The notes: generated by a model not told the origin, from the letters alone. DNA of 64,000 nt from Calcarisporiella thermophila CBS 279.70 (GCF_041956535.1 NW_027192191.1:1127443-1191442), one strand, 5' to 3'. Counted from the stretch's first letter, positions 27,033 through 29,178 are shown. Numbers and translations: made by a program.

Positions 27033-27581
27033 CTATGTGGCTATCGCTAGCGTTTTCACCCCCATTAAGCCAACTCCGTCCACGTAACCCAATATATATA
27101 TCCATATTTTCCCTCCAATGCCCTCGCTCTTCTCATCCTCAAAACCAGCTCGCTCTCCAACTCGATAGACACGCACCTCCTTCAGACCCCTTAATACCTC
27201 TCTCAATCGTTTGTATTGCTCCTTTTGCGGCTGATAGTCGTGATTTTCCAATGACGCCATGAATTCATCCAAAGTCTGCGATCTACATCTCTTCCCGCGC
27301 AAGCTGGGATTTTCTTGTGCAGCTATCGCCGGAAATTCATCGTCGGATGGAAGAGTCGATTTTTCGTACTCAAGTTGGACGACCGTATAGGGCTCGTCGG
27401 ACTCTGAGGGGTAGGTGAGCCCTCTGGTCGCGTTCTCGAGATCCACGGTGAGATCGGTGAATTGTTTAACGGCAGAGCCTTCCTCCTTGGAAGCCGTGCT
27501 GATGGCATTCCGCGAGGCCGGCGGGTTTATAGTGTTATTAGTAAGCATGTCCATGTAGTTTTGGTCGGATCGATCCGTCAT
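27033..27581 (-). CDS. Nuclease A inhibitor (NuiA)-like protein, intronless
   Basis: LENATRGLTYPSESDEPYTVVQL...LDEFM...YKRLREVLRGLKEVRVYRVGE...IWIYILGYVDGVGLMGVKTLAIAT* aligns with recalled Anabaena NuiA (LKQASDGLLFMSESEYPFEVF...FQKLLEVIKSNLKNPQVYRLGEVELDVYVIGETPAGNLAGISTKVVET). Confidence 0.85.
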   Translation of the reverse strand: MTDRSDQNYMDMLTNNTINPPASRNAISTASKEEGSAVKQFTDLTVDLENATRGLTYPSESDEPYTVVQLEYEKSTLPSDDEFPAIAAQENPSLRGKRCRSQTLDEFMASLENHDYQPQKEQYKRLREVLRGLKEVRVYRVGERAGFEDEKSEGIGGKIWIYILGYVDGVGLMGVKTLAIAT

Positions 27582-27876: not shown

Positions 27877-29178
27877 TTAGGAATACCGGCTTTCCTCCAC
27901 CATTAATGCTTCGAACAGCCTAACAGTAGCGTCAGCTTCATCTTGCAAATTCTGTAATCTCAGGTAAGCGTGCGAGTTATTCGAGTTGTCTCGATCTCGG
28001 TTTTGTTGGCGGCGTGCGCGCCTTCCGCTTCCACCTCGTCCACTGCCCTGTCGTCTTCTCTGAGAATCCCGCTCCAGGTTCCTCTCTCTATGTGCTACAC
28101 TACGTGCCACTTCATCCACATCCTCCTCATCCTCCGCCTCGTTATCACGTGAGGAGCGACTGTGATGTATCCCACTATGATCGCTTGACTCATTCCTTCG
28201 CCACCCTCCATATACAATCAACCCATTATCCACGCAGAGTCCGAACTCATCCAAGAATTCCTGATAAAGCTCAAAATCATCCACATCCAACCACTCCTCA
28301 CCAATGCCGTCTTCAAATTCATCCAGATTCTCTTGCTCAAAGAACCAGAACTCGCGGCTACTCCATCCAGCCGGTTCCTGCCCACTATTACGCTGGTATT
28401 GTGGCCGCCTACGCCTTTGTTGGACGTGGCATTGTTCTTCGTCGAGCACGTGGCGTGTGCCATCCGGATTCAAGTGTGCAAAATGGCACGAGTTGCCGAA
28501 AGGACAAAATCGGTTGTTGGCCGGACTAGCACGGAAATGTTTGCAGGGTATACGTGCCGTTTTCGCACGGTATGCCCCGCAAATCTTGTTTTTCTGTGCT
28601 CCGGTTGCGTAAACACTCGATGGGATAATAAAATTGGAAACGGTGCGACAGAGAGGGCAAGATTTGCATTGCGATCCAACATCGGTCTTTTTTCTCCATT
28701 CTCTAATGCATGCTATTCAACATTATTCAAAGATTAATGAATGATCGAGCATTTCATGGATATATGCGAAACTACGACACTCACTGAGACAAAAAATATG
28801 GTCACATTCGGGCAGAAGCCCAAATGTAACTGGCACTTCCAAACAGATGGCACATGTATGGTCACCGCTAGATCTTGTAATTGAGGAGGTGGAGGCCTCA
28901 GCATTGGCTCCACCAGACGTTGCGCCAGGTAAGGCACCCCCAACTTCAGGATTTTCATGCCGGAACCAGCACCCATTGCCGCGACGACAATATCCCTGTG
29001 CAAAATACTTGCACAATTCTTTGCTCGCGGTCAATCTCGATGGTTCGCCATTGGAGGCTTCTGTGGCACAGATCGAAGGGATGGCTGCATCCGTTTGGTC
29101 ATGAAGGAAAAAACAGTCCTTCCCACGGGCACAGTAGCCCTGTGCATAGTACTTGCAAACGACCTCAGAACGAGACAT
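27877..29178 (-). CDS. Makorin-like CCCH/RING E3 ubiquitin ligase, 2 exons
   Basis: Two CCCH fingers (CKYYAQGYCARGKDCFFLH; CKYFAQGYCRRGNGCWFRH), RING CAICLE...CDHIFCL|TCIREWR...CPLCR, and a terminal CCCH (CKHF...CPFGNSCHFAH). Confidence 0.9.

What the first reader, a model, noticed from the sequence alone, without database searches (positions are those of the whole stretch)
27033..27581. Orphan fungal NuiA-type nuclease inhibitor with intact inhibitory residues: candidate safeguard against Nuc1/EndoG-family nucleases
Seen: an intronless 182-aa ORF in an intron-rich genome, aligning end to end with cyanobacterial NuiA. Established: Anabaena NuiA blocks the betabetaalpha-Me nuclease NucA using the Glu of its SESE motif (E24) and its C-terminal Thr, which contacts the active-site Mg2+; NucA is homologous to mitochondrial Nuc1/EndoG. 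Here the motif is PSESD, the protein still ends in Thr (AIAT*), and the NuiA D-W loop is plausibly matched by D-Y (ENHDYQP). In Anabaena nuiA is encoded next to nucA, but this window has no nuclease gene and the protein has no obvious targeting peptide. Inference: a cytosolic inhibitor that restrains leaked Nuc1/EndoG (cell death, antiviral RNA degradation, mtDNA elimination), or immunity against nucleases from bacterial competitors or endosymbionts. I know of no described fungal EndoG inhibitor of this fold.
Basis: partly seen in the sequence, partly recalled or inferred. Interest (0 to 1): 0.82.

Follow-up and report, generated by a model that had tools for sequence, protein, structure and literature searches.

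The report
Fungal NuiA-type nuclease inhibitor gene
This small intronless fungal gene encodes a real relative of the cyanobacterial nuclease inhibitor NuiA that keeps NuiA's two active-site-blocking residues and is modelled confidently onto the active site of a fungal Nuc1/EndoG nuclease, so it is a good but untested candidate for a fungal EndoG inhibitor.

Summary
Window 27033-27581 (minus strand) is a complete 182-aa ORF. It scores above the cut-off for Pfam NuiA_2 (52 bits) and NuiA (48 bits). Its AF2 model (pLDDT 84) has NuiA from the NucA-NuiA crystal complex (2O3B) as best PDB match.

In 31 aligned relatives the Ser-Glu of the SESD motif is invariant. All 31 end at the same residue: Thr in 30, Ser in one.

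The genome has one NuiA-like gene and one Endonuclease_NS gene, a three-exon Nuc1/EndoG orthologue on another contig. A complex model with the closest full-length Nuc1 passed: ipSAE 0.82, best control 0.00. It puts E60 on the DRGH motif and T182 on the metal-ligand Asn. A solved like complex exists, so the pass may be from memory.

New details: a fungus-specific N-terminal motif and an acidic insertion also sit in the modelled interface.

The novelty claim needs trimming. The family is already in Pfam, and the ESM Atlas shows clusters of hundreds of mostly fungal members. Protein inhibitors of fungal nucleases were purified in 1976 and 1989, though I found no gene assigned to them. No inhibition has been shown, and no RNA run was listed.

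The scan had not noted this gene before on other DNA.

Verdict: new member of a catalogued family, with a well-supported, testable function.

The parts
27033..27581 (-). Complete intronless CDS of a 182-aa NuiA-like protein (20.5 kDa, pI 4.8), stop codon included
   Evidence: ORF listing and sequence. Pfam NuiA_2 52.4 bits and NuiA 47.6 bits. AF2 model pLDDT 84. Best PDB match 2o3b_B NuiA, E 1.7e-7, TM 0.78 by target. Mass and pI.
27519..27569 (-). Fungus-specific N-terminal motif (residues 5-21, S-D-Q-N-Y-M-D-M-L-T-N-N-T-I-N-P-P), absent from bacterial NuiA. Predicted extra contact with the nuclease.
   Evidence: The motif D..Y[LM].MLNN..INP is shared with all 21 Mucoromycota-type relatives in alignment A2 and absent from the 9 others. 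Residues 5, 8-9, 11-15 and 17-22 are in the confident interface of the complex model.
27396..27407 (-). SESD motif (S59-E60-S61-D62). E60 is the counterpart of NuiA Glu24, which enters the nuclease active site.
   Evidence: S59 and E60 are invariant and D62 is at least 90% conserved in 31 sequences. HMMER aligns the motif with SESE of 1J57/2O3B NuiA. In the model E60 touches D148, R149, G150, H151 and N183 of the nuclease with 1.4-2.0 A expected error.
27234..27239 (-). D115-Y116, the counterpart of the NuiA Asp-Trp second contact site
   Evidence: Mucoromycota relatives carry D-P-Y in this stretch of the alignment. Residues 113-116 and 118 are in the modelled interface. The role of D75/W76 in NuiA is from my memory of the 2O3B paper and was not re-read here.
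27108..27155 (-). Acidic insertion (residues 143-158, E-R-A-G-F-E-D-E-K-S-E-G-I-G-G-K) between two strands of the sheet
   Evidence: Absent from the other fungal relatives. A similar insertion occurs in two longer proteins of unknown origin, P0007 and P0016. pLDDT is about 72. Residues 146, 148-150, 153-154 and 156-158 are in the modelled interface.
27036..27041 (-). C-terminal A181-T182, directly followed by the stop. T182 is the counterpart of NuiA's terminal Thr, which coordinates the catalytic Mg2+.
   Evidence: All 31 aligned relatives end at this same column: Thr in 30, Ser in 1. The penultimate residue is Glu or Gln in all others and Ala here. In the model T182 touches N183, R184, A188 and H151 of the nuclease. 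The role of the NuiA terminal Thr is stated in PMC2790893 and PMC5587815.

Best explanation
The gene encodes a small acidic, probably cytosolic, NuiA-family protein that inhibits a beta-beta-alpha-Me (Endonuclease_NS) nuclease. The most likely target is the fungus's own single Nuc1/EndoG orthologue. Proposed mechanism, by homology with Anabaena NuiA-NucA: the inhibitor sits on the active-site face of the nuclease. E60 of the SESD motif enters the active site next to the DRGH motif, where the scissile phosphate would lie. The free C-terminal T182 reaches the Mg2+ held by the conserved Asn and forms a metal-ion bridge. D115-Y116 forms a second contact. Two features not present in NuiA appear to enlarge the interface: the fungal N-terminal motif (residues 5-21) and an acidic insertion (143-158). 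Shown here: family membership, fold, conservation of the key residues, a single candidate target in the genome, and a passing complex model. Inferred: actual binding, inhibition, localisation and physiological role, which would be to neutralise Nuc1 that is outside mitochondria or not yet imported.
For: Pfam NuiA_2 and NuiA match above cut-off. The AF2 model has pLDDT 84, and Foldseek's only significant PDB hit is NuiA in the NucA complex, 2o3b_B, at E 1.7e-7 and rmsd 2.5 A. S59 and E60 are invariant, and all 31 aligned relatives end at the same column, Thr in 30 of them. That fits a functional free C-terminus. A close bacterial relative, P0010 (38% identity), is encoded 3 bp downstream of an Endonuclease_NS gene, the classical nuclease-inhibitor arrangement. 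The genome has exactly one NuiA-like gene and one Endonuclease_NS gene, a three-exon Nuc1 orthologue with DRGH, and no Endonuclea_NS_2. Complex model of this protein with Fennellomyces Nuc1 residues 70-325 plus Mg: ipSAE 0.82, 0.82 and 0.81, best of 3 controls 0.00. In the tool's calibration that mark was reached by 51 of 78 solved complexes and 2 of 108 mismatched pairs. The runs agree in at least 88% of contacts and the partner's pLDDT is 81. The lowest-error contacts are E60 with D148, R149, G150, H151 and N183, and T182 with N183, R184 and H151. The E60-D148 contact has its counterpart in the hydrogen bond that PMC5374557 infers between Glu24 and Asp121 from a homology model of the wild-type 2O3B complex. 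43 of 54 interface positions are identical in this genome's own Nuc1 exons, including all catalytic ones. The protein is acidic, pI 4.8.
Against: No experiment shows binding or inhibition for any fungal member. No RNA run was listed, so expression is not shown. The complex pass may be from memory of 2O3B, and the tool warns that a close relative of a true partner can also pass. The nuclease used was the nearest full-length orthologue (66-72% identical to the own exons), not the genome's own protein. The penultimate residue is Ala here where all 30 relatives have Glu or Gln. The protein is very divergent: the best non-self hit is 33% identical, with only 16 hits at E<1e-3 among 1.8 billion representatives. 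The gene is not linked to the nuclease gene. Nuc1 is normally mitochondrial, so inhibitor and target would meet only under particular conditions.
Confidence: 0.65

Rival explanations
1. The protein is an immunity factor against foreign Endonuclease_NS nucleases delivered or secreted by bacteria (competitors or endosymbionts), rather than against the fungus's own Nuc1.
For: The family is mainly bacterial, and there it pairs with secreted nucleases (NuiA literature). The modelled interface is centred on the DRGH and Asn metal site, which all Endonuclease_NS enzymes share. The test cannot tell which family member is bound.
Against: A conserved host target is the simpler reading, because this family is retained across the Mucoromycota sampled here (Mucorales and Umbelopsis) and Atlas clusters point to Ascomycota. 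The N-terminal motif is conserved across the Mucoromycota-type relatives in the alignment. The modelled interface includes Nuc1 positions well outside the catalytic DRGH and Asn residues, and 43 of 54 interface positions are identical in the own Nuc1. No bacterial nuclease was tested.
Confidence: 0.12
2. The NuiA fold has been put to another use in fungi, for example binding a different metal enzyme or acting as a regulator, and the likeness to an inhibitor is inherited form without that function.
For: There are no functional data for any NuiA_2 member. The sequence is very divergent. The penultimate residue is non-canonical. The gene is not linked to a nuclease gene, and one bacterial relative, P0005, also lacks a neighbouring nuclease.
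Against: The residues that stay invariant are exactly the two that NuiA uses to block the active site. The C-terminus falls at the same column in all 31 relatives, and that column holds Thr in 30 of them. That conservation is hard to explain otherwise. The complex model scored 0.82 against 0.00 for the controls.
Confidence: 0.15
3. The ORF is not a working fungal gene: a chance ORF, bacterial contamination, or a recent horizontally acquired remnant.
For: It is intronless in a genome with introns. It is unusually divergent. No expression data could be obtained.
Against: The profile match runs full length with an intact start and stop. The gene lies inside contig 1 at about 1.15 Mb (the word search records a 1.7-Mb longest contig for this protein). 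It carries the N-terminal motif seen only in the Mucoromycota-type relatives of the alignment. In the tree it sits at the base of that clade (SH-aLRT 90). The Umbelopsis orthologue is also intronless.
Confidence: 0.03

Closest known systems
Anabaena (Nostoc) sp. PCC 7120 NuiA, inhibitor of the secreted nuclease NucA (PDB 1J57, 2O3B; Pfam PF07924)
   Same: Same fold (Foldseek E 1.7e-7). Same Ser-Glu motif and same terminal Thr. Acidic small protein. The modelled docking puts the Glu on the Asp of DRGH and the terminal Thr at the metal-ligand Asn, as described for NuiA.
   Different: About 20% identity. An extra ~43-residue N-terminal region carries a conserved fungal motif. There is a 16-residue acidic insertion. 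The second site has Tyr instead of Trp. The penultimate residue is Ala instead of Glu. The host is eukaryotic. The gene is not next to its presumed nuclease. The presumed target is a mitochondrial Nuc1/EndoG rather than a secreted nuclease.
Pfam PF23151 NuiA_2 ('NuiA-like'), uncharacterised proteins of Mucoromycota, with Atlas clusters mostly from Ascomycota
   Same: Full-length profile match, 5-180 on 2-154 of 154. Shares the N-terminal motif, the SE[ST]D motif and the terminal Thr with the Umbelopsis and Mucorales members.
   Different: At most 33% identical to any of them. It branches at the base of the sampled fungal clade. It has its own acidic insertion and an A-T rather than [EQ]-T ending.
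Drosophila EndoGI (cg4930) and human KU80 C-terminal domain, the known eukaryotic protein inhibitors of EndoG
   Same: Proposed job: a non-mitochondrial protein that blocks the EndoG active site and involves the metal site. EndoGI binds a water of the Mg2+ hydration shell and docks an acidic loop into the DNA groove.
   Different: Unrelated fold: HEAT-like repeats versus the alpha/beta NuiA fold. PMC2790893 states that EndoGI evolved independently of NuiA and that inhibitors in other eukaryotes remained to be found. KU80 was reported in 2026.
Protein inhibitors purified from fungi: the Aspergillus oryzae nuclease O inhibitor (Uozumi et al. 1976) and the Neurospora endo-exonuclease inhibitors (Hatahet and Fraser 1989)
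   Same: Fungal proteins that specifically inhibit a sugar-non-specific fungal nuclease (as cited in PMC13522737). From my memory, unverified here: they are about 22-24 kDa, and nuclease O and the Neurospora enzyme are Nuc1/EndoG-type. Both points would fit a 20-kDa acidic NuiA_2 protein.
   Different: No sequence or gene is attached to those inhibitors in anything I could read, so identity with NuiA_2 is only a hypothesis. The original papers are not in the library. I could not check that A. oryzae or N. crassa themselves encode NuiA_2.

Membership tests
NuiA / NuiA_2 (Pfam PF07924, PF23151) | Profile HMM match above the curated gathering score over the whole domain | tested here: met
   NuiA_2 52.4 bits against 27; NuiA 47.6 bits against 22.1; both near full profile length. 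Confirmed on the genomic DNA.
NuiA / NuiA_2 | NuiA alpha/beta fold | tested here: met
   AF2 pLDDT 84, pTM 0.74. Top PDB matches are 2o3b_B (E 1.7e-7, TM 0.78 by target, rmsd 2.5 A) and 1j57. The next hits have E above 0.06. The Atlas structure search also returns NuiA clusters, TM 0.68/0.77.
NuiA-type inhibitor mechanism | Glu of the S-E-S-[ED] motif (NuiA Glu24) that enters the nuclease active site | tested here: met
   E60 aligns with the first Glu of the SESE motif and is invariant in 31 relatives.
NuiA-type inhibitor mechanism | Thr as the very last residue, free to bridge the catalytic metal ion | tested here: met
   The protein ends with T182 then TAG. All 31 relatives end at the same column, 30 with Thr. 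The neighbouring Glu/Gln is Ala here.
NuiA-type inhibitor mechanism | Second contact site Asp-Trp (NuiA D75/W76) | tested here: inconclusive
   D115-Y116 occupies the equivalent stretch and lies in the modelled interface. However it has Tyr, not Trp, the alignment in this loop is gapped, and the role in NuiA is from memory.
NuiA-type inhibitor mechanism | A cognate Endonuclease_NS nuclease in the same organism, adjacent in Anabaena | tested here: inconclusive
   One Endonuclease_NS gene exists (Nuc1-like, contig 27), but it is unlinked. Adjacency is not expected in a eukaryote. A bacterial relative, P0010, is adjacent to such a nuclease.
NuiA-type inhibitor mechanism | Physical binding to the nuclease active site | tested here: inconclusive
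   The complex model passes (0.82 against a best control of 0.00; in the tool's calibration 51 of 78 solved complexes and 2 of 108 mismatched pairs reached the mark). Contacts run between E60 and DRGH and between T182 and N183. It is a model, it used an orthologous Nuc1, and it may lean on 2O3B.
NuiA-type inhibitor mechanism | Tight inhibition of nuclease activity | not testable with these tools
   Needs enzyme assays.
Drosophila EndoGI family | Two tandem HEAT-like helical domains | tested here: not met
   The model is a single alpha/beta domain. The EndoGI fold is described in PMC2790893.

The most novel reading that the evidence does not exclude
NuiA_2 proteins are the missing genes for the protein inhibitors of fungal endo-exonuclease and nuclease O purified in 1976-1989. 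On that reading they form a fungus-wide EndoG/Nuc1 inhibitor of bacterial NuiA ancestry. It would be a further kind of eukaryotic EndoG inhibitor, independent of Drosophila EndoGI and of KU80, which share a structure. It would use the NuiA metal-ion bridge plus a fungus-specific N-terminal clamp to control Nuc1 outside mitochondria.
Probability: 0.45. Interest if true: 0.75.

Novelty: new member of a known kind. Interest (0 to 1): 0.6.

Why it matters
EndoG/Nuc1 is lethal when it meets nuclear DNA. In yeast it has programmed extramitochondrial roles: it attenuates viruses during meiosis (PMC6697816) and degrades extranuclear DNA (PMC11372161). How fungi restrain it outside mitochondria is unknown. 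The only eukaryotic protein inhibitors described are Drosophila EndoGI and, since 2026, human KU80. A conserved fungal NuiA-type inhibitor would give that question a gene and precise mutations to test (E60, the terminal Thr, the N-terminal motif). It might also identify protein inhibitors that were purified from fungi decades ago. It could be a useful reagent for expressing toxic Nuc1-type nucleases. For this particular window the gain is modest: it is one divergent member of a family that databases already label NuiA-like.

Tried and rejected
- The word-index protein search with the single sequence found only the protein itself. The exhaustive search was therefore used.
- phmmer against PDB sequences gave only weak NuiA hits, E 0.4-0.5. 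The fold search settled the point.
- NCBIfam gave no match and PADLOC gave no match.
- Endonuclea_NS_2 (PF13930) is absent from the genome.
- Sequencing-run search for RNA evidence: none was listed. Read laying was therefore not used, and expression remains unshown.
- The look-up of encoding contigs has no record of the window protein.
- There is no synteny between the window and the Umbelopsis locus.
- The papers library holds nothing with 'NuiA-like', 'nuclease A inhibitor-like', PF07924, PF23151 or IPR012489. 'NuiA' with 'fungi' gave nothing relevant. Searches for phrases such as 'Nuc1 inhibitor' and 'EndoG inhibitor' turned up only Drosophila EndoGI and KU80 among the 25 listed of 375 papers.
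- The 1976 JBC paper on the A. oryzae inhibitor is not held. The 1989 Hatahet and Fraser paper was not looked up by id. Their molecular details are therefore from memory only.
- The best non-self hit of the deep search, P0002, is a 1454-aa bacterial DUF11 protein. It matches only the low-complexity stretch 15-55 in six places, and I treat it as compositional.
They were compared one at a time by reference. The complex was modelled with the nearest full-length database orthologue instead.
- Recent bacterial contamination or transfer was considered and rejected, given the fungal N-terminal motif and the tree position.

Full report
**1. The observation**

Window 27033-27581 holds a 182-aa ORF on the minus strand, with an ATG start and a TAG stop. 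The open frame around it is only 186 codons. Its first Met aligns with the first Met of the orthologues. So the gene is complete and needs no intron.

- PSESD at residues 58-62.
- ENHDYQP at residues 112-118.
- The ending AIAT followed by the stop.

The plus-strand ORFs that overlap it (87 aa each) have no support and were not pursued.

**2. What it is**

*Family.* Pfam matches NuiA_2 (PF23151) at 52.4 bits against a cut-off of 27, covering residues 5-180 on profile 2-154 of 154. It also matches NuiA (PF07924) at 47.6 bits against 22.1, covering residues 44-182 on profile 3-130 of 130.

*Fold.* An AlphaFold2 model built on a 31-sequence alignment has mean pLDDT 84. In a Foldseek search of the PDB, its only significant match is the inhibitor chain of the NucA-NuiA crystal complex, 2o3b_B (E 1.7e-7, TM 0.78 by target, rmsd 2.5 A). 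Free NuiA (1j57) comes next, and all other hits have E above 0.06. The ESM Atlas's own model of this protein also lands on NuiA clusters.

The protein is 20.5 kDa with pI 4.8. It has no N-terminal hydrophobic stretch and no basic presequence.

**3. Relatives**

The protein is very divergent. An exhaustive HMMER search of 1.8 billion representatives gave only 16 hits at E<1e-3. The best true relative is 33% identical.
- That closest relative belongs to a cluster that includes an Umbelopsis protein. The cluster's representative, from a JGI metagenome, is named 'Nuclease A inhibitor-like protein'.
- A profile search added orthologues from many Mucorales, including Phycomyces, Absidia, Apophysomyces, Pilobolus and Gongronella. 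All carry both Pfam domains and all are annotated as hypothetical.
- The Atlas lists clusters of 467, 198 and 100 members, mostly eukaryotic and with Ascomycota the commonest phylum. One structure-matched cluster of 264 members has Basidiomycota as its commonest phylum, though it is 59% bacterial.

So 'orphan' is right in the sense of 'not next to a nuclease', but the family itself is catalogued and widespread in fungi.

In a quick maximum-likelihood tree, the window protein sits at the base of the Mucoromycota-type clade, apart from the nine relatives that lack the motif (SH-aLRT 90). The N-terminal motif columns were part of that alignment, and the root is arbitrary. The tree therefore fits vertical descent within fungi but does not date the origin. 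The Umbelopsis orthologue is also intronless and has different neighbours.

**4. Conserved anatomy (alignment A2)**

- S59 and E60 are invariant, and D62 is conserved in at least 90% of sequences.
- Every one of the 31 proteins stops at the same column. That column is Thr in 30 and Ser in one.
- HMMER aligns S59-E60-S61-D62 with the SESE of Anabaena NuiA.
- In NuiA the terminal Thr coordinates the catalytic Mg2+ directly (PMC2790893 and PMC5587815).
- A homology model of the wild-type 2O3B complex in PMC5374557 infers a hydrogen bond between Glu24 and Asp121. That text swaps the two proteins' names.

Conservation of exactly these two elements, and of the position of the stop codon, is the strongest sequence argument that the inhibitory mechanism is retained.

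Three features are not in NuiA:
- An N-terminal motif, D..Y[LM].MLNN..INP (residues 5-21 here), is shared by all 21 Mucoromycota-type relatives in the alignment and is absent from the nine others.
- A 16-residue acidic insertion (residues 143-158) is specific to this protein among the fungal sequences. A similar insertion occurs in two longer proteins of unknown origin, P0007 and P0016.
- The penultimate residue is Ala here, where all the others have Glu or Gln.

**5. A target**

The 28-Mb genome has one NuiA-like gene. It has one Endonuclease_NS gene, on contig 27, in three exons, with an intact DRGH motif. Its first exon opens with a short hydrophobic Gly/Ala-rich stretch. I read the gene as a Nuc1/EndoG orthologue. 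No Endonuclea_NS_2 domain was found.

One of the nearest bacterial relatives, P0010 from a Tepidisphaeraceae MAG, is encoded 3 bp downstream of an Endonuclease_NS gene. The pairing with this nuclease family therefore extends beyond Anabaena.

**6. Complex model**

I used the closest full-length database orthologue instead: Fennellomyces P0035, which is 72% and 66% identical to the two nuclease-domain exons. I took its residues 70-325 and modelled them with Mg and the whole window protein.

*Result.* The ipSAE was 0.82, 0.82 and 0.81 in three runs, and the best of 3 controls scored 0.00. In the tool's calibration the mark was reached by 51 of 78 solved complexes and 2 of 108 mismatched pairs. 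The runs agree in at least 88% of contacts, and the partner's pLDDT is 81.

*Contacts.* The lowest-error contacts are:
- E60 with D148, R149, G150 and H151 (the DRGH motif) and with N183.
- T182 with N183, R184, H151 and A188.

I take N183 to be the metal-ligand Asn because it lies about 30 residues after the catalytic His, as in the Serratia and Anabaena enzymes. That spacing is from my own knowledge.

D115-Y116, the N-terminal motif (residues 5-22) and the acidic insertion (146-158) are also in the confident interface. Of the 54 nuclease positions in the interface, 43 are identical in this genome's own Nuc1 exons, including every catalytic one. The 11 changes are mostly conservative.

*Caveats given by the tool.* A like complex (2O3B) is solved, so the pass may be from memory. 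A pass does not tell which family member is bound. The calibration held no ligand riding along.

**7. Literature**

- No paper in the library mentions NuiA-like proteins of fungi.
- Two 2026 papers add human KU80 as an EndoG inhibitor and cite only the Drosophila protein for other species.
- A 2026 review (PMC13522737) cites two purified fungal protein inhibitors: that of Aspergillus oryzae nuclease O (Uozumi et al. 1976) and those of Neurospora endo-exonuclease (Hatahet and Fraser 1989).

What is missing is their gene and fold. From memory only, those inhibitors are about 22-24 kDa and the enzymes are Nuc1/EndoG-type, which would fit NuiA_2. I could not read the 1976 paper, did not look up the 1989 paper by id, and could not confirm NuiA_2 in those two species.

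**8. Verdict**

Best explanation (confidence 0.65): a cytosolic NuiA-type inhibitor of the fungus's own Nuc1/EndoG. It would use E60 and the terminal T182 as NuiA does, with extra contacts from a fungal N-terminal motif and an acidic insertion.

Rivals:
- Immunity against foreign Endonuclease_NS nucleases (0.12).
- A repurposed fold (0.15).
- A non-functional ORF (0.03).

It is a new, divergent member of a catalogued family. The value lies in the testable link between that family and the control of fungal EndoG.

Noticed in passing
G000 contig 27, 130942-132063 (loci L001, L011-L013): The genome's only Endonuclease_NS gene is a three-exon Nuc1/EndoG orthologue on the minus strand. It has an intact DRGH motif, and its first exon opens with a short hydrophobic Gly/Ala-rich stretch. 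It is 51-72% identical, exon by exon, to Fennellomyces Nuc1. No whole-protein model of it was found in the protein database.
   Followed up: partly
Alignment A2; window 27519-27569 (-): A short N-terminal motif, D..Y[LM].MLNN..INP, is conserved in all 21 Mucoromycota-type NuiA_2 proteins in the alignment and is absent from the nine other relatives. The complex model places it on the nuclease surface away from the active site. Its role is unknown.
   Followed up: partly
L005 3003-4528 (Tepidisphaeraceae MAG contig): An Endonuclease_NS gene (331 aa) is followed 3 bp later by a NuiA/NuiA_2 gene (P0010). A T4-type RNA ligase gene and a gene with Peptidase_M56 and Secretin domains lie nearby. It looks like a nuclease-inhibitor operon outside cyanobacteria.
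   Followed up: partly
P0007 (267 aa) and P0016 (298 aa), metagenomic: These are longer NuiA proteins whose N-terminal ~130-150 residues match no Pfam family. They share with the window protein an insertion between the last strands of the sheet. Their organisms are unknown.
   Followed up: partly
P0002 (1454 aa, Arcticibacterium DUF11/DUF7507 protein): This was the best non-self hit of the exhaustive search. It matches only residues 15-55 of the window protein, in six repeated stretches. The match is most likely compositional (a Thr/Asn/Pro-rich linker) and not homology.
   Followed up: no
window 27877-28473 (-): The next ORF on the same strand (198 aa, TTG start as listed) is very rich in Arg, Glu and Asp and has no obvious family. 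It was not examined.
   Followed up: no
whole genome G000: For both genes looked at, the best matches are Mucoromycota (Umbelopsis and Mucorales), but at only 33% (NuiA-like) and 66-72% (Nuc1) identity. The genome seems to come from a poorly sampled early-diverging fungal lineage.
   Followed up: no
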